From Octopus bimaculoides (lineage: Eukaryota), in NCBI RefSeq assembly GCF_001194135.2, contig NC_068988.1, positions 96,284,458 to 96,323,538 of the forward strand: a DNA stretch of 39,081 nucleotides, in the 5' to 3' direction. The notes under the pieces were generated by a model. That model was not told the origin of the DNA and made no database searches. It worked only from the letters and a program-made list of their open reading frames with translations. Within the stretch, counting starts at the first letter, position 1; each line of letters starts with the position of its first letter. Made by a program: the position numbers and the translations under genes. Of the stretch, positions 1 to 33,038 are shown piece after piece.

Positions 1-430
1 GAAATGACTTGAACAAATTTAAAAGAAAAATGTTTTTTTTCCTAAAAATTATGGAAATATTTCTTTCTTTTTTATTTGTGTGTATGGAATAAAGAAAAAT
101 AAATATTTTTCTTCAAAAATGACCTCCTCAGTCATCTTGGCATGTCTGAGGTTTATGTAATATTTTGTTTTGACGAATCTGCTATTTGTTCTAATTTAAC
201 CACTTCAATAATCTGTAATAAAATACAAAAAAAAAAAAAAATGGGCAATATGTTAAAATGACAAAGACAAACAAAATTCTGTTTTCATTTTTTCTTTTAT
301 TTTTCAATTTGGAAATATTGAGCATCTTCTTGGCACATATAATTTTGGTTGAGTGAATAACTGTTCTTTTCAGTTGGATGTTTCCTTCCATTGAACAAAA
401 GACAAGCACATACACACACACAAATAGGAA

Positions 431-505
431 TTTCTGCCTACCAAATTCAATCACAAGGCTTCAGTCAGCCTAAGGCTATACCAGAAGACACTTGTCCAAG
501 GTCTA
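431..505 (-). mobile_element. Fragment of the tRNA/CORE-type SINE head (family B)
   Basis: ccaaattcaatcacaaggcttcagtcagcctaaggctataccagaagacacttgtccaagg matches the copy at 32905-32970. Confidence 0.65.
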
Positions 506-958
506 CTCAGCCATACTGTGTGGCACTTTGAGCAATCGCTGTATGGTATTTAATTGTTGCTGCTCAGTCCAGCCCTCTTCTCCATAGCTCTGTCACATTT
601 TAGGAATGGTCAAATTCATTCCAGAGTTTTCCACTAATAATTCTGGTCTCTAGAATATTCACCAAAGAGAGACGAAAAGCAAAAATCAATTTTGATTGTG
701 CTTGAATATAAAGATAAAGATAGGACATGACTAAAATATTTACAGGCAGTCTTTAATGTGCCATTCCCTCATTTCACTGCCCGTAAAGGCTAGAATAATA
801 AACCAAATGAAATGCTGGCATGTTTTGAAGTCATTTCACTGATGGAGGCACCGTAGATTTCAGTTTTGACTTCTCATAACTTTATTAATTACAACAGTTT
901 TGAGCTTTCTTGTTTCAAAATTTGTTATTTAGCAGCTATTTGGACAGGGACACATTTG

Positions 959-1130
959 AACGGAAATATTCTCATGTAGTAAAGATTGTTTGCCAACATA
1001 ACATGGCAGTCCTGGTTTAGGACGAATGTTGCTGTAATTTAGCCCCAGGAGACATCGTCTCCAGCTGGCTATACAACACGATCTGTGTCCTTATATTTTT
1101 GAACAAGGGAATCTAGCACCCCAACCCCTC
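959..1130. mobile_element. Interspersed repeat (family C; SINE or LINE-tail type)
   Basis: aacatggcagtcctggtttaggacgaatgttgctgtaatttagccccagg...ctggctatacaacacgatctgtgtccttatatttt resembles a common octopus repeat as I recall it. A more decayed relative may lie at about 8790-8970. Confidence 0.45.
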
Positions 1131-3950
1131 AGCTCAAAGCAATATCTGTATCGCGAAAGTAGAAATATTCTTGTTAATAATTAAGAGAACATTAGAAAGT
1201 TAAAGCTTCTTTTGCAAGATATTCCATTGTTACTGTTGTTATGTTTGTCATTGGATGGGGTGGTCAGGTCCTTTTTTCTTTCTTGTCAGATGCTCTGCCC
1301 GATATGCCAACCTTTTTTATTTACCTCTTACAACATTCTGGGTGTATCTTTTTACAAATCAAGTTATTAAGCAATTTGTCCCCTGCCTATCTTTTGCATC
1401 ACACCTACACACCGTGATGCTGAAAACAAGTTTGGTAACACAGAAATCAGGTTTTGGTGAGGACAGTGTATAGCCAACTGAACTATAGTAATCCATGGCA
1501 CCAATGGAATGGGAAACCAAGCTGACATCAGTTAGAACACAATCTATTTTAAGACTTGTTATAAGTATGTTATTATAGCTTTTAATGAAGAAGAGTAGCA
1601 TCATTGATCCCTTTTCAGGGCTCTGGAGAGTTCTGGGGTGAAAATCACGATTTTTAGTTTGACCTCAGGCTAATTCAACAGTGTGCACTCAATTTCTGGC
1701 AATGATATTTGAAGGTCAAGGATTGGTGTTAAATCTGGGAGAAGGGTTAAGTGTCCCATCCAAGAACATATAAGAGTCCGTTTGAAGGATTTCTGCTCTG
1801 TCTCTGGAAATTTCATTTGAAATCAAGTTGATCTTAAAGCACTTCATTGAACTCCATCGGGAATTGGTAAGGAAGTCGGGCTACTCAACAGAATCATTTC
1901 AAAACTTATTTCATCAATTGATCTAAGACTTTGAACTGTTACGGTACAGTGTGCAAAACTTCTTAACACTCGCCATTTTGTTTCAGTGCATCAGGTTTTA
2001 ACTTTAGTCAAGGCTTCAAACTAAAAGTCAAAAGAAATAGATAAAAAAAGCAACAAATAAATAAAAACAGTCAACTGTTTTTAGTATCGGTGGTGTGGTT
2101 GGATTTGAAATGAACCCCCAATGTAAATGAATTTGCTGCCAGTTTTGTGGGTTATGTCCCTTCATATGAAATACTTTCAGAGTTGTTACCCTTACACTCA
2201 CCAATTATTCTCTTATTACCCATAACCGCTCGCTTCCTATTCTTATTTTGTTATTACTTTTGGACTCGTCTACTATTCCTATACAAATATACACATCCAG
2301 TACTGCAGATGTTTGAATTATAAATGAGACAATTTCTTGGGGGTTTATAAGTCATTTCGTATATTGCTCTTGTATCAGAAGAATTTGGGAAAGAACGAGA
2401 CAATTAGACAGAAAAACTGTGGAGAGTAAAGCGAAGATACCTGTATCCCAGTCTATAAGAATTGGTCAGTAATTAATCTGACCAAAGCTTGTGAAATGTT
2501 ATTGGCCAGGTTGGAAATGGCGAAATATTTTGATACCTGATAATATAAACTATTAGAAATAAATATAAAATTGACTACAGCAATGATAATGAAATTTTAC
2601 CAGCTACAAATATTCTGCAGCAGCAGAAAAAAAAAAGATTGCAAATCTTTAATTCGTATCTGAGTTAAGACAATACGCGCTCCAATTTTGAATCAACAAA
2701 ATTCATTTTACGTGAACTTTAAATTTCCGAAAATTAAAAGAAATTCATTTAATCACATGTATATAAAGTAGAGACAATACGAAATAAAACTTCATTATCA
2801 ACTGTACTATATCGATTACTCTAAACATTCACTTATTTATATTTATTTGTATTTACTTAAAAATAACTGAAACTATAACGAAATAAAGATCTAGTTTAAA
2901 CAGTTTATTATTACAATATTTATAAACAACCATGTTGATATAAATTGCTTCTGCACAGGGGAATTCAATATTTTAAAAATCCGTTCTGGATAAGGTTTTA
3001 AGGATGGGGGCAGTCGACCTTCAACCAAACCAAGAAAAGTGTTTCCATTGCTTTTTTCAACCTGTTGTCAGTCTCAACTCCTGTGATGAGGACAGGATTT
3101 GAAATGAAAACACGTTGAACCGGAAGAGCTACAGTAAATCATCCCGTTTAGAATCGCTCAAACAATTCAGATGGTCAACTGCTCGGAGAGGAATTGTTAT
3201 TTATGGATCCCGAAAGAATGAAAAAGGGGTTTATTAATTCGCCCTTAAGACCTTAATACTTGTATAATAACGAAGACTTATGAGTAAAGAACAGAAATTC
3301 ATGAAAGAAATAAGGAGAAAACGGATTTTGAAATTAAAAAAAATCGTTTATTCTATAATACAAAATTTATGACAAATTAAATGTAAAAAAGTGTTAGTTG
3401 TAAATCTGAATGGTTAAAAATAAATGTAATCTCTCTCGTTAATTACAAATATAGAAAAAAAAATTACAAAAAAAAAAACAGGAGTAAAAAGAAATAGAAT
3501 TATGATATGAACGAGTTAATGCTTTGTTTTTCGGAGACAAAGCAGAAGATTTACATGGAAATAATTAACGAATTAAGAGTCGTGTAAAAATATATGAAAT
3601 GTAATAGAAATGAATGAAACGTCGATGGAGGTGATATAGTGTTTGTATGTAGACGAATGTCAGTGTAGAACATTCAGAATTAAAGAGAAATGTTTCCATG
3701 TTCAACTGTGTAAAGTTAATATGAATAAAATACATGTGAACTGTTGCAATAAAGTACAGTGAGAAATTGATGTCTATTTACATATTATATACATTAAAAC
3801 ACACCTGAATGTAGCAGGTCGTGTTACTTATGCACAGCCATAGAGAGTAAGTTAAATTCTTACTTTATTATGTCGGAAACAGTGTATGCTTCGTTCACTA
3901 TTAACATTTGTTATGTTTTCTGTGTAATTTACGTAGAGTGTAGAAATATG

Positions 3951-4877
3951 TTAATCAGTTTTCACCGCGTTCTCCGTGTTACTTGGCGACACAGATCTGT
4001 TTAAAAAGGGAAACTGTTTCTTGAACTGAGTGTCTGTGTTGTGAAGTATCTCAAGGAAATCAACCGCTAATTTATCCAATAATTGTTCATTGAGAGAAGT
4101 GTCCATATAAAAATGCCATAGATTTTGTTCGGAAGACAACGGAATCTTCCAGTTACCCCATTCAATAAACAAGTGTATACATATAGATGCGATAGTTTTT
4201 GCAGTATATTTGAGAGAGAACTTCGTTAAAATCAGACAGCATGTAGCAAACTGGTTAATTATTTTCATTAATTTATCTTCGAGTTTGATTATGTTACATA
4301 CTTTGATAATATGAAATTGGGGTAGAGTAATTTGAAAATCGAAGTTTAAACAAACTAAAAGGGCTTCTTCATAAAGTAAAAAGTCATTGGCTATCCGATT
4401 AATGGTAGTTTTGTTTTTTTCTAAATGTAGATATTGTTTGAAATATGTTTGACTTTCAACAATCATTTGCTCAACTTCAAGCAATTTATCATCGAATTTA
4501 GCAGCCAAAAACAAACACACGGGCCCCATGAGTTTATAGCTAAACACTTGGAATGAGTTATACATATAGAATCGGTGCATATAAATTACGGCAGTGTTTA
4601 GTATATATTCACTTAACATCAATCGTCGGTTAATGTATAACATAAACATACCTGTTTTCTGACGATAAAGTAATTCGTTTTCATACGTAAAGTTATCAGG
4701 TTGATATCTTCGGTTGAAAATCTCAACAATTTGTTCTTCGCTGAAAATCCAGTCTGCTTTTCGTGGTGCTTTTCCATTGGAGCTTTCAGGTGATTCATTC
4801 ATCGAAGTTTCATGATTTTGTTGATTATCATGAATTTCCACCTGTAATGAATTCTCAATATTCGCCATTTGATCCAT
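3951..4877 (-). CDS. Cyclin T-like protein, intronless, two cyclin folds only (308 aa from ATG 4877, or 305 aa from ATG 4868)
   Basis: The translation aligns by eye with the cyclin T core. WIFSEEQI matches WYFTREQL; ELLYRQK matches ELSYRQQ; NTAVIYMHRFYM matches NTAIVYMHRFYM; LFLAAKFDD matches LFLAAKVEE; YEEALLVCLNFDFQITLP matches LESIILQTLGFELTIDHP; KFSLKY matches TFSLQY; WGNWKIPLS matches WSNWEIPVS; LLDKLAVDFLEIL matches LLDELTHEFLQIL. There are no stops or frameshifts. The ORF-track start at 5168 is a TTG, and the first in-frame ATG is at 4877. No symbol is given because this looks like a divergent paralogue. Confidence 0.92.
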   Translation of the reverse strand: MDQMANIENSLQVEIHDNQQNHETSMNESPESSNGKAPRKADWIFSEEQIVEIFNRRYQPDNFTYENELLYRQKTGMFMLYINRRLMLSEYILNTAVIYMHRFYMYNSFQVFSYKLMGPVCLFLAAKFDDKLLEVEQMIVESQTYFKQYLHLEKNKTTINRIANDFLLYEEALLVCLNFDFQITLPQFHIIKVCNIIKLEDKLMKIINQFATCCLILTKFSLKYTAKTIASICIHLFIEWGNWKIPLSSEQNLWHFYMDTSLNEQLLDKLAVDFLEILHNTDTQFKKQFPFLNRSVSPSNTENAVKTD

Positions 4878-5011
4878 TTTAAAATAAATTTCGTTTTTTA
4901 ACTCTTTTTCGGTTAATCGATAAAGTTTCAGCTGTATGATGTCTGAAATCTGTATTTTCTTCGATATGTCCGTTGGAAAAATTACTTTCGCGGTCAGTAG
5001 GTGTTGCCGAA

Positions 5012-5100
5012 GCGGAAGTAGCGGGAGGAAAAACTTCACTGTCCCCTCTTTCTTATATATACCCAACAGGTGTGCCCGGACAAAAGGGATGAGCGGAAGT
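5012..5100 (-). promoter_or_regulatory. Candidate proximal promoter of the cyclin T-like gene: TATA box plus two ETS-like sites
   Basis: Minus-strand TATATAAG at 5052-5059, with a pyrimidine-rich TTTTTCCTCCC about 26-30 nt downstream (around 5033-5023). GCGGAAGT occurs at 5012-5019 and 5093-5100. The site lies in a local CpG-richer island about 150-180 nt upstream of the ATG. Confidence 0.5.
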
Positions 5101-5162
5101 TGATCCCGGGAATGTAGCCTAATTAATGATGCATGATAAACGCCGATGGAGTGTAAACTCAC

Positions 5163-5230
5163 CTTCAAATTAAATAGTCTTTTAATTTAATTCATAGTAG
5201 ATAGAAATTTATAAATTGCATTCACCACAT
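5163..5230 (-). other. Candidate 68-nt non-coding (5'UTR) exon
   Basis: Minus-strand acceptor ctgttctgcttttactaatatag| and donor AAG|GTGAGT (intron starts at 5162). All three frames contain stops. A further donor, GCT|GTGAGT, lies at 5573/5572. Confidence 0.4.
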
Positions 5231-15178: not shown

Positions 15179-16204
15179 AACTCCAAAATAATTACAAAAT
15201 TCGTCTATCAAAGCAGAAAAACTCTCTCTCCCAAACCTTTCTCTCTACGCATATCATATAAACACATGCTTCTCCTAATCTCCTCTATTTCCCTATTCCA
15301 CACAACCACTTCCCCTGTCTATCCATACCGCATCTAATTCTCATTCACATTGCTTCACCAGCCAAAAGCACTTCTGTTTATGAATTTTCTCCTTTCTTGA
15401 AAAAGAAAGTAGCTATCAAGCCGCAATTAAAATTCAGTCCTATTGAAATTTTATAGCAAAATAATTTTGACTGTGTGTGACGAGCAAAAATCTCGTCAAT
15501 CCAATCCACAACGAGATCCTACAAGAGAGAACTGACCGAATGTGCAATAAAATTCATTTCGAAGTTTTGACGCCTGTGTCCAAAGCTTTCTCATCAATTC
15601 ACATATAATGTACATAAGACTTAGAATTTCAAACTATTTAATATTCTCCTATTTCTAAAAACATTTCGTTTGTTTTACATTACAATTTCTTTTTGTGAAA
15701 TACCAACCGGAAATACATGCCAGTTTGTCGAGATTGTATTAACAAACCAACAGGAGGAAAATTAGAATTAAAGATGGAAATAACACTAACGAAAAAATAA
15801 AATAAAATAAAATATATTGTACGATACAACACTGGAGAAAACTGTTGGCATTTTCTTCCTTCTTGGCTGGTGTTGAGGGAGTAAAAGGAGATTCAATGGC
15901 AACAATTTTAAATAACAAATAAACATAATTAAACAAAAAATGGTGTAATTAGCGAAATGTGAAATATGAAGCTAAAAGTGACAAAGGTTTCTTATATACG
16001 AACACAACTATGTATATTCATTTAAAATATCTCTTCTATTACTGAATTCCATTTCGTTGATAAATAAACACTTAAAGACTGTAACAAACATTTAGCATAA
16101 AGTAAAACTAACAGTCAAAAGGCTGAGACGGATCTTCTCCTTCGTCAAAATTATGATTCTATTCCTTGCTTGAGGCACGAGTTTTCAATTCAGTGGCTTT
16201 TAAA

Positions 16205-16270
16205 TCGTGGAATTCCGTCGGTTACGACGACGAGGGTTCCAGTTGATCCGATCAATGGAACAACCTGATC
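16205..16270 (-). mobile_element. Tail fragment of SINE family D
   Basis: tccgtcggttacgacgacgagggttccagttgatccgatcaatggaacaacctg matches 36200-36255. Confidence 0.75.
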
Positions 16271-16532
16271 GCAGATCGTCCCGATATGATTCGAGTACAC
16301 AGTGCAGAAGAGCTGCAAAATAGAGCGAAATATCAATATCCACCGTTCTCGATCACTTACGTTACACTTGGTTTATGATATTCGGCGTCTTAAAGGGACA
16401 TTTTCTTTGATGCTATTCTGTAGGTAAGGAGGGAAGCAGCGTGTAAGCAAAACACACTCAATAAGCGAGTGTGGTATCGATAATGTTTGCATTAGTAGAG
16501 CTGCTTATAATAAATTATATATATATATATAT

Positions 16533-16921
16533 NNNNNNNNNNNNNNNNNNNNNNNNNNNNNNNNNNNNNNNNNNNNNNNNNNNNNNNNNNNNNNNNNNNN
16601 NNNNNNNNNNNNNNNNNNNNNNNNNNNNNNNNNNNNNNNNNNNNNNNNNNNNNNNNNNNNNNNNNNNNNNNNNNNNNNNNNNNNNNNNNNNNNNNNNNNN
16701 NNNNNNNNNNNNNNNNNNNNNNNNNNNNNNNNNNNNNNNNNNNNNNNNNNNNNNNNNNNNNNNNNNNNNNNNNNNNNNNNNNNNNNNNNNNNNNNNNNNN
16801 NNNNNNNNNNNNNNNNNNNNNNNNNNNNNNNNNNNNNNNNNNNNNNNNNNNNNNNNNNNNNNNNNNNNNNNNNNNNNNNNNNNNNNNNNNNNNNNNNNNN
16901 NNNNNNNNNNNNNNNNNNNNN
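16533..16921. other. Assembly gap (others at 18167-18176, 23178-23238, 29733-30383, 32421-32811, 35864-36160 and 38390-38519)
   Basis: Runs of N; six of the seven abut microsatellite on at least one side. Confidence 0.99.
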
Positions 16922-16968
<47 letters not shown>

Positions 16969-17202
16969 ATATGTACATGTACATTTATAGACATACATAT
17001 TATATATATCTTTATGTATGTATATACTTACACACACACACACACACACACATTTATTATATACACACGTATGTATATAACTGCCGCCGCCGATTATGCA
17101 AGGCAGCAAGAAGTCATGGTCGTTGCCGTTGTGTTTGTTGTAATTGTTTCCTATGTTTGTGATGATGATGATGATACAGACGTAGTGATGAAGACGGTAT
17201 GT

Positions 17203-17236
<34 letters not shown>

Positions 17237-17534
17237 GTAATCAGCCAAATCAAAGATTTCAATCGCCTGTGATCATGGAGGGTGAACGATAATGAGCTGC
17301 GACAGATTGACATCGTCCTAGTATTGTCACTGAGTTTTTGTCAGCTGACAAAATGATTTCTTTCTCAGACCTGACCTTTCCTGACCTCATAATACTTGGG
17401 GGTTGTGGCGGCATGGAACTGACTGGGCCACAGGGGACACACAGACTTTTACACGGAGACGGTAAAAGGAAACAACAAGAATAACAAAAGCGAGTTGGAA
17501 TGAAGTGTACAAGTGGTGGAAAGGGCGGAAACGG

Positions 17535-17830
17535 TATTAGATTCTTTTCCCTTCCCCCCGTTTTTCTTCTTTACTTCTTCTTCCTTATTTTCTTTCGTCG
17601 TTTCTTTCTTCTTTCCATTCTCTTTCTTTCTCGTTTACCTTTTTCTTCCCTTCTTTCTTTCTCATTCGTTCCTTCTCGTCTTCGTTCCTCCTCCATTTCT
17701 TCAGTCTCCTTTTCTAATGTTTCCCTCTCTCTCAATTTCCTTTTGCTTCATTCTTTATTTCTTTCTTCATTTTTTTGTTTCGTTCTTTATTTCTTTCCGA
17801 TCTCTTTTTCTTTCTTCAATTCAATCCTTT
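17535..17830. repeat. CT/T-rich polypyrimidine low-complexity tract
   Basis: Direct reading. Confidence 0.85.
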
Positions 17831-18122
17831 ATTGAAATTGAAGAAATTGGAAATTGGCTTATTAGTCTGAGTATAAACTGACCGAAATAGGATAAAAATA
17901 AAGGCAGAACGCATTCTTCTATCATCATTTTGTATAAAATAGATATCATAAATGGAATTGAGTTTTTGGATTGGAATTAAGAAGAGAAAAAGGTGGGAGA
18001 TTCTTTGAGACCTGGAGGGCGGCGGTTCTATGCCACACAGACGTAAAAATGGATAACAAGGAACAAATATTTCTTATTCCAGCGGATGTTGTAGTACCTC
18101 CAGGGACACATAATTCAGGAGA

Positions 18123-18166
<44 letters not shown>

Positions 18167-18176
18167 NNNNNNNNNN

Positions 18177-18211
<35 letters not shown>

Positions 18212-18575
18212 TGTGGACGGAAGAAAGAGAGAGAGAAAGAGAGGGCGGGGAGACAATAACAGTTGGTAACTATCGACATCAAAGATGGAACCAAGAAGAA
18301 TTTAGCCTGGAAAACACCGAAATACTTGGAAGATGTGGTCAGAGGTTATTCTGCCCATTCCCTTTCCAAGAAGATGAAACACAGTTTAAACATTCGTTCA
18401 ACTGGAGAAATGCAGACGATACTTTACACACATACCCACTCACACACACACATACATTCAATCACACAAACACACACACAGTTATGTATTTATATATGTA
18501 TACAAGAAATTATTGGTTGTTGTAGTTTTAGCTTTGTGACATTTCAGCTGTTAACTAAAATATAAGACATACATT

Positions 18576-18701
18576 CGCGCGCGCGCGCACACACACACAC
18601 GCACACACACACACACGCACACAAACACAAACATACAGACATGCATGTATATATATATATATATATATATGTATACAAGATGTTAGTTATAGTATTTTTA
18701 A

Positions 18702-18795
<94 letters not shown>

Positions 18796-18800
18796 CACAC
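18576..18800. repeat. Compound (CG)n-(CA)n-(TA)n-(CA)n microsatellite
   Basis: Direct reading. Confidence 0.95.
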
Positions 18801-19410
18801 ATAAATGTGTATGTGTATTTGTATTTACGCACATTCCCATTTTGTCTTTGCACTTATGCTTATGAATGTTGACTTCATGTTCTTTTTACAATCCTGACAC
18901 AAACACAACGGCACATGTGCCACCACACACACATACATAAGCGCGCGCGCACACACACACATACACACCTACACATACTCCCATAAATATATGATCTGGA
19001 AAATGTACATTGAGACATTTATAGCCTAACGAAGTGTCTTGAACAAATTACCATCAGAGCGTATAAATATCGTTTTAGAATTGAGGAGTCTAAGTTCACT
19101 TTGTACTCATGTGTCGAATAATTTCTCTCCCTTGGGCTCGAGTTAAGAAAACGTTACAAAAGAACATAGTCCATTAGATTTTTACCTTCAAACACTACAA
19201 TTCAAATTAATCCCAAATGGATTAAGAGTTAATACGCACACACGCAAACACACACACACACGCACACACACACACATCTAAGATGGAATCTGAACTGTTT
19301 TGCAACAAGTCATGCATGAATGTAACCTAACAAATATGCTTGTTATGCAACATAGATTCAATAATATTGCGCGCGCAAACATACGTACATACATACATAC
19401 ATACACACAT

Positions 19411-19445
<35 letters not shown>

Positions 19446-19493
19446 TACATACATATATACATACACATGCATACATACATACATACAAGTTAA

Positions 19494-19800
19494 AACACAA
19501 CTGGCCAGATATTGTTGTTTGGGACCACAAAGGAAAATATATGTTCTTTTGTGGAAGGCAGCTGCTCTCTGGACACGAAGATTAGAAAAATAGAAGAGAA
19601 AGAGGACATCCATGGACCACTGAGAAAGAGTTTGAAAGTCCAGTAACCAAGATACACTTTCAGATTCATACCTATTATTATTGAAGCAATAGGATACTTA
19701 CCGACCAGTCTGGAGCAAACTGTGGCTGAACTTGGGATCGTGAGGAGAGAATGTAAATCTTTAATTCATACACTCACAAATGATCACCATATCTAGGACC
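19494..19800 (+). mobile_element. C-terminal restriction-like endonuclease region of an R4/Dong-type non-LTR retrotransposon, decayed
   Basis: Translates HNWPDIVVWDHKGK/VEGSCSLDTKIRKIEEKEDIHGPLRKSLKVQ*PRYTFRFIPIIIEAIGYLPTSLEQ. This matches the RLE pattern RPD...(D/E)VSCPxD...EKxxKY...PIxIGALG, with one frameshift and one stop. Confidence 0.8.
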
Positions 19801-19873
<73 letters not shown>

Positions 19874-21114
19874 ACATAAATGCATGATCTTACAATTTCT
19901 TTTATGCACAACGTAAATTTTCCCCAAATATTTTTCTCTCCTTTTTGTTTGCACAGACATTTACGTTTGATGTAACAAATAATGTTGAAATTCCAAGTGA
20001 TTCATTGCCGAGATTGAAATAAAAAAGGCGTTTTAAATGTTTTGTGTTGTTCGGGTTTCAAAATAGCAAAGGTTTTCATCTAAAACCTTATTATTTTAAC
20101 ATTGATATTGCATAGTATGTGATGGAATAACACTGATACTATATTAATAAAGATATCAGAAGCAGTGACTGGTAAACTGCAACGAAATTTAGAAATGTTA
20201 TTAAAATAAATGAACCTCGTTCATTGTTTCACACACACACACACACACACACACATTTGTCTGCGTGCGTATATAGTTTTATGGTTTTCGTATTGGAAAA
20301 GGTATCAAAACTATCAAGTGTTTTCTACTAAATGACACTGAAGTGATTGCAAACAATTATTTGGAAAACTTTTACTTCTGAGAGTCTTGAGAATGATTGT
20401 ATCACTCAACAACTTCTTCATAGAAGCTCTTATCTTGATGTTTCTCTAAGACAAACATCTTTCATTTAAAAAGAAAAAGAAAAAAATCGAATAAATTAAG
20501 GAATAAAAAAATAAGAGGATAAAGTAATTTAACGCATGTAGGATAACGATTAGGAAAAAAGAAAAATTTGCCTGGATTTAAGGTTTTCTTTTTGTTTAAA
20601 AATTAGCAACAAAATGAAAATGTATGAGAACGTTTGTCCAACGTTGTGTTTCATCACACGAGAACAACGTCTGACGATGAATGTATTTCTATTCGCCTGA
20701 CTTGACATTAAATACACGGAAAATAAACGTGATATAGCATGTAACAACATCTTGAGTAAATAAAGAAGTTCTTTTTTTATATTGTAGAGCAGAAATCAGA
20801 ATGCACAATGAGACAGAGAGAATGAAAACCTTGTAACATTTCTGCTTTTCACAAGTCCTTCTTTATTGATGCAGGTGAAGTGAAAAAGTTGATTCATCTC
20901 GCCATTGAATTTGCTCCTACAATTCGACAGCATTCACTAAAACTAGTTTCTTATAAGATGTAAGATACAATTATTTATATTTCTGTGGAATTCATTTTGT
21001 TTAAAAGCGCAAGAAACTTCGGTCAGTAAAAATATATCCAGTTTCAATTCGAACTATTCACAATTTAGGGTGGATAAAAACTTATCCGTATTCCAGACTT
21101 ACCTGAAACGAGTG

Positions 21115-29252: not shown

Positions 29253-29625
29253 ACTTGTTTCAGTCATTAGACTGCCACCATGCTGGGGCACCGGACGAAT
29301 CAACCTGACGACTTGTTTTTTTTGAAGCCTTGCACTTATTCTGTCGGGCTCTTTGCCGAAACACTAAGTTACTGGGACATAAACACACCAACACCGGTTG
29401 TCAAACTGTGGTGGGAGACAAACAGACACAACACACACACATGTACACACGCATTCATACAGACATGCACACACACATACGACGGGCTTCTTTCAGTTTC
29501 CACTCATAAGGCTTTAACCGGCCTGAGGCTAAAGTAAAAGACGGTTTGCCAAAGTTCCACGCAGTGAGACTGAACCCCAAATCATACGGTTTGGAAGCGA
29601 ACTTCTTACCACACAGCCACGCCTT
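29253..29625 (-). mobile_element. Full-length bipartite SINE: tRNA/CORE-like head (B), internal TG microsatellite, tail (E)
   Basis: On the minus strand, A-box TGGCTGTGTGG and B-box GGTTCAGTCTC, then a conserved body, (TG)n, and a tail ending ...atgactgaaacaagt. Confidence 0.85.
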
Positions 29626-29631
29626 AAACAA

Positions 29632-30391
29632 ATGTCTGTCTTTCTGTCCGTCTGTCCGTCCGTCCGTCCGTCCGTCCGTCTGTCCATCTGTCTGCCTGTC
29701 TGTCTGTCCGTCCGTCCGTCCGTCCGTCCGTCNNNNNNNNNNNNNNNNNNNNNNNNNNNNNNNNNNNNNNNNNNNNNNNNNNNNNNNNNNNNNNNNNNNN
29801 NNNNNNNNNNNNNNNNNNNNNNNNNNNNNNNNNNNNNNNNNNNNNNNNNNNNNNNNNNNNNNNNNNNNNNNNNNNNNNNNNNNNNNNNNNNNNNNNNNNN
29901 NNNNNNNNNNNNNNNNNNNNNNNNNNNNNNNNNNNNNNNNNNNNNNNNNNNNNNNNNNNNNNNNNNNNNNNNNNNNNNNNNNNNNNNNNNNNNNNNNNNN
30001 NNNNNNNNNNNNNNNNNNNNNNNNNNNNNNNNNNNNNNNNNNNNNNNNNNNNNNNNNNNNNNNNNNNNNNNNNNNNNNNNNNNNNNNNNNNNNNNNNNNN
30101 NNNNNNNNNNNNNNNNNNNNNNNNNNNNNNNNNNNNNNNNNNNNNNNNNNNNNNNNNNNNNNNNNNNNNNNNNNNNNNNNNNNNNNNNNNNNNNNNNNNN
30201 NNNNNNNNNNNNNNNNNNNNNNNNNNNNNNNNNNNNNNNNNNNNNNNNNNNNNNNNNNNNNNNNNNNNNNNNNNNNNNNNNNNNNNNNNNNNNNNNNNNN
30301 NNNNNNNNNNNNNNNNNNNNNNNNNNNNNNNNNNNNNNNNNNNNNNNNNNNNNNNNNNNNNNNNNNNNNNNNNNNNNNNNNNNGTCCGTCC

Positions 30392-30458
<67 letters not shown>

Positions 30459-30472
30459 CGTCCGTCCGTCCG
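29632..30472. repeat. (GTCC)n/(GTCT)n tetranucleotide array interrupted by an assembly gap (N 29733-30383)
   Basis: Direct reading. Confidence 0.95.
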
Positions 30473-30691
30473 ATGCGCGCAGAGTAACAAAACCATTCTG
30501 CATGCAATATTCCTGTACCGGAGATTTACTGATCCATGGAGATATATCAAACAATTGCTACACCGTGAAGGACGGATACGGCTATCAGCTAGACGCATTT
30601 TTAAGATCATCTAGTCAACTTCCTTTGGATGAGAAGGGTAGACAATCTGTTGGTTATAGGAAAAAAGGTTGTGTGGTGGACGCGATTGAAA

Positions 30692-30822
30692 GAGCTGTTT
30701 CAGTCATTTGACTGCGGCCATGTTGGAGCACTGCCTTTAGTCACTGACCCCAGGACTTATTCTTTGTAAGCCTAGTACTTATTCTATCGCCCTCTTTTGC
30801 CGAACCGCTAAGCTACAGGGAC
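30692..30822 (-). mobile_element. Isolated tail (E) of the bipartite SINE
   Basis: tttcagtcatttgactgcggccatgttggagcac...cttttgccgaaccgctaag matches 29255-29375 and 32200-32270. Confidence 0.8.
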
Positions 30823-32190: not shown

Positions 32191-32370
32191 AATCGACCGC
32201 AGGACTTATTCATTGTAAGCCAAGTACTTATTCTATCGCTGTCTTTTGCCGAACCGTTAGGTTACGGGGACATAAACACATCAACATCGGTTGTCACGCG
32301 ATGATGGTGGGCGGGACAAACCCAGACACACAAACATATACATGCATACATACATCCATGCATACATACA

Positions 32371-32420
<50 letters not shown>

Positions 32421-33038
32421 NNNNNNNNNNNNNNNNNNNNNNNNNNNNNNNNNNNNNNNNNNNNNNNNNNNNNNNNNNNNNNNNNNNNNNNNNNNNNNNN
32501 NNNNNNNNNNNNNNNNNNNNNNNNNNNNNNNNNNNNNNNNNNNNNNNNNNNNNNNNNNNNNNNNNNNNNNNNNNNNNNNNNNNNNNNNNNNNNNNNNNNN
32601 NNNNNNNNNNNNNNNNNNNNNNNNNNNNNNNNNNNNNNNNNNNNNNNNNNNNNNNNNNNNNNNNNNNNNNNNNNNNNNNNNNNNNNNNNNNNNNNNNNNN
32701 NNNNNNNNNNNNNNNNNNNNNNNNNNNNNNNNNNNNNNNNNNNNNNNNNNNNNNNNNNNNNNNNNNNNNNNNNNNNNNNNNNNNNNNNNNNNNNNNNNNN
32801 NNNNNNNNNNNTATATATATAAAGGAGACCACTAGGTGGACTATTAATGTGCTAGAAGGAGATCACACACATATATATATACGACAGGCCTCTTTCAGTT
32901 TCCGTCTACCAAATCCACTCACAAGGCTTTGGTCGGCCGAGGCTATAGTAGAAGACACTTGCTCATGATGGCACGCGGTGGGATTGAACCCAGGACCATG
33001 TGGTTTGTAAGCAAGTTACTTACCTCATAACCACTCCT
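32191..33038 (-). mobile_element. Bipartite SINE (B+E) whose internal microsatellite contains the assembly gap at 32421-32811
   Basis: The head at 32880-33038 and the tail at 32191-32330 have the same order and orientation as the 29253-29625 copy. Confidence 0.8.

What the first reader, a model, noticed from the sequence alone, without database searches (positions are those of the whole stretch)
3951..4877. Intact, intronless, core-only cyclin T paralogue: a possible lineage-specific P-TEFb subunit
Seen: a clean 308-codon ORF with both cyclin folds that stops about 30 aa after the second fold. It keeps the two cyclin-box residues that contact the CDK (K in FLAAK; E in LLYEEALL). It is strongly diverged elsewhere (KVEE to KFDD, QQAAN to QKTGM). 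Known: metazoan cyclin T genes are normally multi-intron and carry a long C-terminal tail, including the His-rich region implicated in Pol II CTD engagement. Inference: this is a retrogene or duplicate under selection that could form a tail-less CDK9 complex, or act as a competitor. No poly(A) remnant or target-site duplication is visible, so it is not a recent insertion.
Basis: partly seen in the sequence, partly recalled or inferred. Interest (0 to 1): 0.72.

Follow-up and report, generated by a model that had tools for sequence, protein, structure and literature searches.

The report
Octopod tail-less cyclin T retrogene
This is an intact, intronless, tail-less copy of the transcription-elongation cyclin T that octopuses and the paper nautilus have kept as a fast-evolving gene since before they diverged; what it does is untested.

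Summary
Window 3951-4877, minus strand, is a 308-codon ORF in Octopus bimaculoides. It has both cyclin folds and matches human cyclin T1 (E 3e-44) far better than cyclin K (5e-14).

It is a real, old gene. Single-exon orthologues exist in O. sinensis (89% identity, syntenic), in a third Octopus-like species (80%) and in Argonauta hians (257 aa, 33%). Octopus and Argonauta share derived motifs and group at 99.5% bootstrap. Within Octopus, dN/dS is 0.4-0.67, every CDS indel is in frame, and the CDS is better conserved than its flanks.

Canonical cyclin T genes in abalone and a probable spider have introns at matching positions inside the box. The intronless state therefore points to retroposition.

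The protein is only 28-35% identical to any canonical cyclin T box, whereas canonical boxes are 66-78% identical to the abalone box. Lys93 and Glu137 and the cyclin-T-specific AFF4-docking loop are kept. The main CDK9-docking helix, the HEXIM1 contact Tyr175 and Thr143/Thr149 are changed.

My best guess is a P-TEFb/SEC modulator, either a scaffold competitor or a HEXIM-blind CDK9 partner.

Two gaps remain: I could not retrieve a canonical cephalopod cyclin T, and expression is unproven.

The parts
3951..4877 (-). Complete CDS of the core-only cyclin T paralogue. It has 308 codons plus a TAA stop at 3951-3953 and is a single exon.
   Evidence: The orthologous single-exon CDSs are L002 10001-10918 (O. 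sinensis) and L005 10001-10774 (Argonauta hians).
4866..4868 (-). Probable conserved start codon (Met4, MAN...). The upstream ATG at 4875-4877 is ATA in O. sinensis.
   Evidence: three-species DNA alignment
4758..4877 (-). N-terminal extension, aa 1-40. It is predicted disordered, evolves fast and is absent from the Argonauta orthologue.
   Evidence: pLDDT is below 50 for aa 1-39. dN/dS is 1.2-2.4 on small counts, and the in-frame indels lie here. The Argonauta protein has only five residues before the conserved RW.
4341..4673 (-). First cyclin fold (Pfam Cyclin_N, aa 69-179). It holds the retained Lys93 and Glu137 equivalents and the strongly diverged H3-H4 CDK9-docking segment.
4047..4325 (-). 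Second cyclin fold (Pfam CycT2-like_C, aa 185-277). It includes the retained cyclin-T-specific W-x-N-W-x-(I/V)-P-x-S ... W..Y loop, which is the AFF4 docking surface of human CycT1.
   Evidence: PMC3589825
3954..4046 (-). Short C-terminal end, aa 278-308. It carries the K-(K/E)-(Q/E)-F-P-(F/I)-L motif shared only with the Argonauta orthologue. No TRM, coiled coil, His-rich region or PEST tail follows.
   Evidence: pLDDT is below 50 for aa 299-308.
5050..5064 (-). TATA-box-like element GGGTATATA(T/A)AAGA, about 180 nt upstream of the ATG. It is conserved in all three Octopus-type sequences and is a candidate core promoter.
   Evidence: alignment and sequence. Function is inferred, not shown.
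5013..5100 (+). Two CGGAAGT (ETS-core-like) motifs, at 5013-5019 and 5094-5100, flanking the TATA element. They lie inside blocks conserved among the Octopus sequences.
   Evidence: This is motif resemblance only.
3864..3869 (-). AATAAA polyadenylation-signal-like hexamer 81 nt after the stop. It reads AGTAAA in O. sinensis.

Best explanation
Identity (about 0.85 confidence, or 0.9 if a canonical cyclin T locus exists in octopods). The ORF is a processed retrocopy of cyclin T that became a real gene in an ancestor of Octopus and Argonauta. It has been kept as a coding gene ever since. It encodes only the two cyclin folds and evolves unusually fast.

Mechanism (inferred, about 0.35). The protein modulates the P-TEFb / super-elongation-complex network through its second cyclin fold.
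- It keeps the cyclin-T-specific loop and aromatic pocket that dock the AFF4-type scaffold in human CycT1.
- It has lost the tail that engages Pol II.
- It has lost the Tyr175 contact for HEXIM.
- It has lost the Thr143/Thr149 assembly sites.
- It has lost conservation of the main CDK9-docking helix.

It would therefore most likely occupy scaffold or partner sites as a tail-less, HEXIM/7SK-blind cyclin T with weakened or re-tuned CDK9 binding. In effect it would be a natural counterpart of the engineered dominant-negative CycT1(1-280)-V107E.

What is shown: the fold, the family, ORF conservation, purifying selection, the intronless structure and the residue pattern. What is inferred: every binding property, expression, and the existence of the parental gene.
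For: Family and fold:
- Pfam finds Cyclin_N and CycT2-like_C.
- CycT1 scores 154.8 bits against 55.7 for cyclin K.
- The AF2 model and Foldseek top hits are CycT1/T2, TM 0.86-0.91.
- In an NJ tree, T plus paralogues separate from cyclin-K-like sequences at 100% bootstrap.

Real gene:
- Orthologues are P0002 (O. sinensis, 305 aa, 89%, with the same TM9SF/EMP70 neighbour about 9 kb downstream), P0003 (298 aa, 80%) and P0046 (Argonauta hians, 257 aa).
- NG86 dN/dS is 0.53-0.67 overall and 0.39-0.50 in the core.
- One-sided Fisher tests of dS over dN give p from 0.0006 to 0.04 for the three core comparisons and 0.007 to 0.08 for the whole CDS.
- CDS identity is 94% and 90%, against 85% and 80-81% in the flanks.
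- All three CDS indels are multiples of three, while flank indels are mostly not.
- Simulated neutral ORF survival is 7%, 1.3% and 0.2% for 56, 92 and 130 substitutions, and 0 for 300 or more.

Orthology with Argonauta:
- Shared derived LPQSH (canonical HPHTH), Y-E-E (canonical N-E-N), WGNW and the FP insertion in the C-terminal K.FP.L motif. No other short or divergent cyclin T shows these.
- Bootstrap support is 99.5%.

Retroposition: Haliotis CCNT spans 17 kb. Its exon ends fall at aa 47, 75, about 138, 159, 173 and 247, and the whole tail is in the last exon. A probable spider gene shares boundaries at 49/50, 76/77, 140 and 161. All three octopod CDSs are single exons.

Mechanism:
- Octopus-Argonauta identity peaks at human positions 195-214 (0.60, mean BLOSUM 4.4) and is 0.00 across 95-124.
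- W207, N209, W210, W221 and Y224 are identical, and L163, V164 and R165 are kept or conservatively replaced.
- W207, W210 and the IP.S loop are absent from cyclin-K-like proteins of the same fold.
- Changed positions are Y175 to N/K, Q97 to K/V, V107 to E in Octopus, T143 to C/S, T149 to Q/R/H/G, and K168-D169 to D-K (G-K in O. sinensis) in Octopus and E-E in Argonauta.
- In human CycT1, Q97K, V107E, Y175S/E, K168E and T143A/T149A have the cited effects (PMC4226998; PMC8648303). The AFF4 contacts come from PMC3589825.
Against: - No canonical cephalopod cyclin T was retrieved. 'Paralogue' therefore rests on rate arguments, not on seeing the parent.
- There is no expression evidence. The exact proteins are on record only on genome contigs, and the third-species contig is colinear with genomic DNA upstream of the TATA element, so it is probably DNA.
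- Lys93, Glu137, Phe146, Phe75, Ala91 and Ala92 are retained in all copies. Octopus also keeps acidic residues at 95, 96 and 102. CDK9 binding may therefore be intact in Octopus.
- Retention at AFF4-contact positions (5 of 10 identical plus 3 conservative) is not statistically distinguishable from retention at CDK9-contact positions (about 9 of 24 plus 3).
- Trp and Tyr residues are slow-evolving in general.
- Human CycT1 not bound to CDK9 is rapidly degraded (PMC8648303), which argues against a free-standing decoy.
- The tree places the clade at the base of the cyclin T group rather than inside molluscs. This is probably long-branch attraction, so the tree itself does not date the duplication.
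Confidence: 0.4

Rival explanations
1. It is an alternative activating subunit of CDK9. It would bind CDK9 through the retained Lys/Glu pair and form a tail-less P-TEFb. That complex would escape HEXIM/7SK sequestration because Tyr175 is lost. It would act in a restricted tissue such as germline, which is typical of fast-evolving retrogenes.
For: - K93, E137, F146, F75, A91, A92 and R68 are retained in all four octopod sequences.
- Octopus keeps acidic residues at 95, 96 and 102.
- The two-fold core is predicted with high confidence and superposes on CDK9-bound CycT1.
- From my own knowledge: human CycT1 1-280 is sufficient to bind CDK9.
Against: - Docking helix 94-113 is the least conserved segment between the Octopus and Argonauta copies (0.00 identity across 95-124), yet it is among the most conserved in canonical cyclin T.
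- Octopus naturally carries Q97K and V107E. It also has non-conservative changes at Q56, C111, K168, D169 and P249. Each of these positions weakens CDK9 binding when mutated in human CycT1.
- T143 and T149, needed for P-TEFb assembly in human cells, are changed.
Confidence: 0.3
2. It is the only cyclin T of octopods. On this reading the retrogene replaced the multi-exon parent, and this protein is the essential P-TEFb cyclin.
For: I could not find any canonical cephalopod cyclin T. It was absent among the named representatives of the 150 best hits of the exhaustive search. It was also absent from the 120 best hits of a lophotrochozoan full-length profile. Retrogene replacement is a documented process (PMC5803294).
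Against: - Absence here is weak evidence. Only 120-150 hits are listed per search. Unnamed cluster representatives can hide named members, as P0032 hides Argopecten. The word-index search also filters by target length.
- An essential sole cyclin T would be under strong constraint. This gene has dN/dS about 0.5 and is only 33% identical between Octopus and Argonauta. Canonical boxes are 66-78% identical to the abalone box across bilaterian phyla.
Confidence: 0.07
3. It has acquired a partner or role outside P-TEFb, such as another transcriptional CDK or a non-kinase partner. Or it is a conserved but functionally marginal gene drifting under weak constraint.
For: - It evolves very fast. About half of the columns that are 95% or more conserved in canonical cyclin T are changed.
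- There are shared, paralogue-specific conserved changes at the fold junction and CDK-facing segment: LPQSH, Y-E-E, Q50R and Q56E.
- There is no expression evidence.
Against: - ORF retention between Octopus and Argonauta cannot be neutral.
- The best-conserved surface is a cyclin-T-specific one.
- No similarity to other cyclin families exceeds that to T.
Confidence: 0.2
4. It is a processed pseudogene whose open frame is fortuitous.
For: It is intronless, and there is no direct expression evidence.
Against: - The ORF is intact in four genomes.
- All CDS indels are in frame.
- dN/dS is significantly below 1 in the core.
- The CDS is more conserved than its flanks.
- Simulated neutral ORF survival is 0.2-7% within Octopus and 0 at deeper divergence.
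Confidence: 0.03

Closest known systems
Canonical metazoan cyclin T (human CCNT1/CCNT2 and the lophotrochozoan orthologues, e.g. Haliotis XP_067687687.1)
   Same: It has the same two-fold cyclin box and gives the best sequence and structure match. The Lys93/Glu137 pair, Phe146, Arg68 and the W207/N209/W210/W221/Y224 AFF4 pocket are retained.
   Different: - It is only 28-35% identical, whereas canonical boxes are 66-78% identical to the abalone box.
- It has no C-terminal tail, whereas canonical proteins are 600-1500 aa.
- It is intronless, whereas canonical genes have at least six introns.
- The VEEQPRKLEHVI helix, Tyr175, Thr143 and Thr149 are not conserved.
Engineered human CycT1(1-280)-V107E dominant negative (Kuzmina et al. 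2014, PMC4226998)
   Same: It is a box-only cyclin T. Octopus naturally has Glu at the position aligned to Val107. The AFF4-docking residues are retained while the Hexim1 and CDK9 determinants are altered.
   Different: It is a natural gene with dozens of further substitutions. Argonauta has Ile at position 107. No binding data exist, so compensation by neighbouring changes (K106V) cannot be excluded.
Cyclin K (partner of CDK12/13)
   Same: It has the same double cyclin fold and also matches the Pfam CycT2-like_C domain.
   Different: Similarity is much weaker: 55.7 against 154.8 bits, and TM 0.77-0.85 against 0.86-0.91. Cyclin-K-like proteins lack W207, W210 and the IP.S loop that the octopod protein keeps. 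The two groups separate at 100% bootstrap.
Functional retrogenes derived from multi-exon housekeeping genes (e.g. the amphioxus SYCP1 retrogene, PMC5803294)
   Same: It is a single-exon coding copy of a gene whose relatives have conserved introns, it is kept under selection, and its insertion hallmarks have eroded.
   Different: The parent locus has not been seen here. The copy is truncated to the core domain and is far more diverged than typical retrogenes.
P0137, a 272-aa core-only, single-ORF cyclin T-like protein on a 465-kb contig of ENA metagenome assembly ERZ21867824
   Same: It is short, has no tail and is a single ORF. It is a divergent member of the cyclin T family (T2 4e-41) and groups with the octopod clade at 96% NJ bootstrap.
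   Different: It lacks the octopod synapomorphies LPQSH and the FP insertion, and it also lacks W210 and Y224. Its host organism is unknown, and it shares no DNA similarity with the octopod loci. The grouping may be long-branch attraction.

Membership tests
Cyclin T family (P-TEFb cyclins) | Two tandem cyclin folds of the transcriptional-cyclin type | tested here: met
   Pfam finds Cyclin_N and CycT2-like_C. The AF2 model has pLDDT 82.8. Foldseek gives TM 0.86-0.91 to CycT1/T2.
Cyclin T family (P-TEFb cyclins) | Closer to cyclin T than to cyclins K, L, C or H | tested here: met
   T1 scores 154.8 bits, T2 134.4, K 55.7, C about 23 and L1 20.9. The Argonauta orthologue shows the same order. NJ bootstrap support is 100%.
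Cyclin T family (P-TEFb cyclins) | Conserved CDK9-docking surface: Lys93, Glu137 and the H3-H4 segment LAAKVEEQPRKLEHVI | tested here: inconclusive
   K93, E137, F146, A91 and A92 are kept. Positions 94-113 are replaced, and Q97K and V107E are present in Octopus. Binding itself cannot be tested here.
Cyclin T family (P-TEFb cyclins) | HEXIM1/7SK control through Tyr175 and Asn60 (invariant in the 58 canonical boxes) and Leu133 (93%) | tested here: not met
   Y175 is N in Octopus and K in Argonauta. N60 is kept in Octopus but is H in Argonauta. L133 is F in Octopus (PMC4226998).
Cyclin T family (P-TEFb cyclins) | Long C-terminal regulatory tail (TRM, coiled coil, His-rich region, PEST) | tested here: not met
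   The protein ends 31 aa after the second fold. A stop at the equivalent place is conserved in all four species.
Cyclin T family (P-TEFb cyclins) | AFF4/SEC docking pocket on the second fold (L163-V164-R165, W207, N209-E211, W210, W221, Y224) | tested here: met
   Five of ten positions are identical and three are conservative, in both Octopus and Argonauta. The loop is absent from cyclin-K-like proteins. This is at the sequence level only.
Cyclin T family (P-TEFb cyclins) | Forms an active kinase complex with CDK9 | not testable with these tools
   This needs co-IP, a kinase assay or multimer modelling with octopus CDK9.
Retrogene (functional processed retrocopy) | Coding region without introns, where relatives have conserved introns | tested here: met
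   The CDS is a single exon in O. bimaculoides, O. sinensis and A. hians. The Haliotis and probable-spider genes have shared intron positions inside the box.
Retrogene (functional processed retrocopy) | Poly(A) tract remnant and target-site duplication | tested here: not met
   There is no A-run of six or more within 890 nt of the stop. Only chance-level direct repeats are found. This is expected for an insertion older than the Octopus-Argonauta split.
Retrogene (functional processed retrocopy) | A multi-exon parent gene elsewhere in the same genome | tested here: inconclusive
   No cephalopod canonical cyclin T appeared among the listed hits. The tools cannot search the octopus genome directly.
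Retrogene (functional processed retrocopy) | Maintained by selection and expressed | tested here: inconclusive
   Selection is met: dN/dS is 0.39-0.67, indels are in frame and the ORF is kept in four species. Expression has not been demonstrated.

The most novel reading that the evidence does not exclude
Octopods carry a natural dominant-negative or HEXIM-blind cyclin T. It would be a tail-less cyclin box that keeps the SEC-scaffold docking site but has shed HEXIM/7SK control and canonical CDK9 docking. That would give this lineage its own brake on, or bypass of, Pol II pause release. Its very high rate of evolution would reflect an ongoing conflict or a germline-specific role.
Probability: 0.25. 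Interest if true: 0.7.

Novelty: new variant of a known kind. Interest (0 to 1): 0.5.

Why it matters
P-TEFb and cyclin T form one of the most conserved regulatory modules of animal transcription. In the sample used here, 58 canonical cyclin boxes from many bilaterian phyla are 66-78% identical to the abalone box.

This gene is a naturally occurring cyclin T reduced to its box. It has been kept since before Octopus and Argonauta diverged, yet it is only about 33% identical to the canonical protein. It is therefore a ready-made evolutionary dissection of which cyclin T surfaces can be separated. The AFF4-type docking loop is kept. The HEXIM contact, the assembly phospho-sites and the main CDK9-docking helix are let go.

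If it proves to be a scaffold competitor or a 7SK/HEXIM-insensitive partner, it would be a lineage-specific layer of elongation control in cephalopods. It would also be a natural analogue of engineered CycT1 dominant negatives.

If it is simply a tissue-restricted duplicate, it is an ordinary, if unusually fast-evolving, retrogene. It is already machine-annotated as 'cyclin-T1-like' in O. sinensis. I found no paper that mentions it.

Tried and rejected
1. Finding the canonical octopus cyclin T.
- The word-index search with the window protein and with the Haliotis box returned only targets up to about 1.75 times the query length.
- A full-length lophotrochozoan profile (A1) listed 120 hits, none from a cephalopod.
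- Cluster look-ups on 30 representatives found only Argonauta P0046.
- P0029, P0335, P0336 and P0337 form an unnamed mollusc-like group.
- A test for group-specific residues shared with the paralogue gave no signal: 2-3 of 24, no better than the control groups.
- P0037 sits on a compact, intronless 4.4-kb contig next to KANSL2, so it is not a cephalopod.
- P0096 is a multi-intron gene in GCA_026930045.1, probably a spider.
- P0100 is not on record.

2. Synteny with Argonauta. tblastx within 10 kb either side found only the cyclin gene and a short repeat.

3. Host of P0137. There was no DNA similarity to octopod loci, no Pfam domain in neighbouring ORFs and no paper for ERZ21867824.

4. Poly(A) and target-site duplication. 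None found.

5. Other content of the window. There was no Pfam hit in eight other ORFs, no Rfam family and no tRNA. The bacterial promoter and terminator scan is irrelevant here.

6. Literature. No paper links octopus or cephalopods with cyclin T or P-TEFb, and none mentions SRR11869394.

7. Rejected readings.
- The 405-aa extended ORF is rejected because the upstream frame is not conserved.
- Chance ORF or processed pseudogene is rejected.
- Cyclin K, L or C membership is rejected.
Full report
**What is in the sequence.** Window 3951-4877 on the minus strand is an uninterrupted ORF of 308 codons ending in TAA. Pfam places Cyclin_N at aa 69-179 (E 3.8e-11) and CycT2-like_C at aa 185-277 (E 3.4e-38). 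The protein therefore stops 31 residues after the second fold.

- Against solved structures the best matches are human cyclin T1 (3.4e-44, 154.8 bits) and T2 (5.5e-38). Cyclin K follows at 5e-14, then cyclins C and L1.
- An AlphaFold2 model (pLDDT 82.8, pTM 0.81; disordered only at aa 1-39 and 299-308) superposes on CDK9-bound CycT1 and on CycT2. TM is 0.86-0.91 and rmsd 2.0-2.3 A for nearly all chains. Cyclin K comes next.
- The window is Octopus bimaculoides chromosome CM046608.1 at about 96.28 Mb.

**It is a gene, not a chance ORF or a dead retrocopy.** The protein database holds a syntenic O. sinensis orthologue. It is machine-named 'cyclin-T1-like', has 305 aa and is 89% identical. The same TM9SF/EMP70 gene lies about 9 kb downstream in both species. 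There is also a third orthologue of 298 aa (80% identity) on a Logan contig from SRR11869394.

- Nei-Gojobori dN/dS is 0.53-0.67 for the whole CDS and 0.39-0.50 for the cyclin core. The disordered N-terminus is at or above 1, on small counts.
- The excess of synonymous change is significant in the core (one-sided Fisher p from 0.0006 to 0.04). It is weaker for the whole CDS (p from 0.007 to 0.08).
- The CDS is 94% and 90% identical between species, against 85% and 80-81% for its flanks.
- The three CDS indels are 3, 15 and 3 nt, while flank indels are mostly not multiples of three.
- Neutral simulations keep the ORF open in 7%, 1.3% and 0.2% of trials for 56, 92 and 130 substitutions, and never for 300 or more.

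**It is much older than the genus.** The exhaustive representative search found only one close cluster. Every canonical cyclin T box came out at 28-35% identity. One of the remaining hits, P0046, is a 257-aa hypothetical protein of Argonauta hians, encoded by a single exon.

P0046 is only 33% identical to the Octopus protein and 31% to canonical boxes. It shares derived states with Octopus at positions that are nearly invariant in canonical cyclin T:
- LPQSH for HPHTH
- Y-E-E for N-E-N
- WGNW
- a two-residue FP insertion in a C-terminal K-x-x-F-P-x-L motif
- truncation at the same place

None of 25 other short or divergent cyclin T proteins shows these states. Octopus plus Argonauta group at 99.5% NJ bootstrap. 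The gene therefore predates the split of Octopodoidea and Argonautoidea. From my own knowledge that split is of the order of 100 million years or more. An ORF cannot stay open that long without selection.

**Origin.** The canonical cyclin T gene of Haliotis spans 17 kb. Its exon ends fall at aa 47, 75, about 138, 159, 173 and 247, and the whole tail lies in the last exon. A gene in assembly GCA_026930045.1, probably a spider, spans 47.6 kb and shares boundaries at 49/50, 76/77, 140 and 161. These introns are therefore ancestral.

The simultaneous absence of all of them from the three octopod CDSs is the signature of retroposition. No poly(A) remnant or target-site duplication remains, as expected at this age.

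Similarity runs a few residues past the last canonical exon junction (KKQFPFL against KRKILTW). This suggests a normally spliced template whose tail was lost later. That step is inference.

**How diverged it is.** Fifty-eight canonical boxes from many bilaterian phyla are 66-78% identical to the Haliotis box. The octopod proteins retain the canonical residue at only 48% (Octopus) and 43% (Argonauta) of the 79 columns that are 95% or more conserved.

In the tree the clade sits at the base of the cyclin T group next to another long branch, not inside molluscs. I read this as long-branch attraction.

**Which surfaces are kept.** I mapped published human CycT1 data onto the alignment. CDK9 contacts in 6Z45 come from PMC11130503. 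Mutant phenotypes come from PMC4226998. The Thr143/Thr149 results come from PMC8648303. AFF4 contacts come from PMC3589825.

Retained in all octopod copies: K93, E137, F146, F75, A91, A92 and R68.

Changed:
- E95-E96 to D-D in Octopus and C-F in Argonauta.
- Q97 to K in Octopus. This is the human Q97K mutation, which weakens CDK9 and Hexim1 binding.
- V107 to E in Octopus. This is the human V107E mutation, which abolishes CDK9 and Hexim1 binding but keeps AFF4 binding.
- C111, K168-D169 and P249.
- T143 to C or S.
- T149 to Q, R, H or G.
- Y175, which is invariant in canonical proteins, to N or K. Human Y175S/E loses Hexim1 only.

The AFF4 pocket is largely preserved in both lineages. W207, N209, W210, W221 and Y224 are identical. 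L163, V164 and R165 are kept or conservatively replaced. E211 and E246 are changed.

A sliding comparison of the Octopus and Argonauta proteins peaks at human positions 195-214 (identity 0.60). It falls to 0.00 across 95-124, which includes the most conserved segment of canonical cyclin T. W207, W210 and the I-P-x-S loop are absent from cyclin-K-like proteins with the same fold. They are therefore not needed for folding.

**Interpretation.** The shown facts fit an octopod-specific cyclin T retrogene under purifying but relaxed or diversifying selection.

For mechanism I commit, at about 0.35, to a modulator that works through the second-fold docking surface. It would have no tail, be blind to HEXIM/7SK and have weakened or re-tuned CDK9 binding. 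That makes it a natural analogue of CycT1(1-280)-V107E.

The retained Lys/Glu pair and the acidic residues kept in Octopus favour it. The counts at AFF4 and CDK9 contact positions do not differ significantly. Free CycT1 is unstable in human cells. I therefore do not regard the choice as settled.

**Limits.**
- I could not retrieve a canonical cephalopod cyclin T. The tools list only the best 120-150 hits, hide named members behind unnamed representatives and cannot search the octopus genome. 'Paralogue' is therefore inferred. The inference rests on an essential sole cyclin T being unlikely to evolve at dN/dS about 0.5 and 33% identity between two octopod families.
- Expression is unproven. The exact proteins are recorded only on genome contigs. 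The SRR11869394 contig is colinear with genomic DNA for 600 nt upstream, past the conserved TATA element, so it is probably genomic.
- No paper in the library mentions this gene.

**Verdict.** The gene is machine-annotated but uncharacterised. The functional reading remains a hypothesis, and the sequence pattern sharpens it. Interest is moderate. It is a new variant of a well-known family, and it could become a useful natural experiment on P-TEFb surfaces if its partners are determined.

Noticed in passing
window 5050-5064 and 5013-5100 (minus-strand gene orientation): A TATA-like element GGGTATATA(T/A)AAGA lies about 180 nt upstream of the ATG. Two CGGAAGT (ETS-core-like) motifs lie next to it. 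All sit in blocks conserved among the three Octopus-type sequences. No similar promoter is recognisable upstream of the Argonauta orthologue.
   Followed up: partly
window about 5160-5168 and about 4940-4946 (minus strand): A consensus splice-donor-like AAG|GTGAGT is conserved in three species, and a TTTCAG acceptor-like site lies about 70 nt before the ATG. Together they could mark a 5'-UTR intron that would contain the TATA element. This conflicts with the TATA-promoter reading and cannot be resolved without RNA data.
   Followed up: no
window 4878-5168: The reading frame stays open 291 nt upstream of the ATG in O. bimaculoides. The open stretch is 309, 180, 9 and 9 nt in O. bimaculoides, O. 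sinensis, the third species and Argonauta. The 405-aa 'ORF' listed with a TTG start is therefore an artefact of the bacterial ORF definition.
   Followed up: yes
L007 10001-10819 (ENA metagenome assembly ERZ21867824, contig ctg122904l, 465 kb): This is a second kind of core-only, single-ORF cyclin T-like protein (P0137, 272 aa). It groups with the octopod clade at 96% NJ bootstrap but lacks the octopod synapomorphies. The contig looks eukaryotic (37% GC, no Pfam domains nearby), and its host is unknown.
   Followed up: partly
window 32882-32988; L005 6416-6489, 9212-9279, 12319-12426: A short interspersed repeat of about 75-110 nt is shared between O. bimaculoides and three places in the Argonauta locus, at 79-92% identity. 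It suggests an old octopod repeat family.
   Followed up: no
L002 (O. sinensis) 317-4199 and 15671-20223, compared with L003 15920-19994: In O. sinensis a segment of about 3.5-4 kb is present on both sides of the cyclin gene, in direct orientation and about 15 kb apart, at 80-87% identity to the single O. bimaculoides copy. The region more than about 4.8 kb upstream of the gene (window beyond about 9700) has no counterpart in the O. sinensis locus.
   Followed up: no
window 16471-17313, 29455-30711, 32281-32968: These stretches are open in several frames on both strands. Two coincide with low-complexity or microsatellite DNA: GTCC/GTCT arrays at 29633-30470 and an AT run at 32374-32420. They are spurious ORFs. 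The cyclin gene is the only recognisable coding feature in the 39 kb.
   Followed up: yes
L006 (Logan ERR6338309 contig, 4378 bp): This is a canonical-type, 720-aa cyclin T (P0037) encoded without introns, only about 100 nt from a divergently oriented KANSL2-like gene. It shows that intronless full-length cyclin T genes exist in some compact genomes. The organism is unknown.
   Followed up: no
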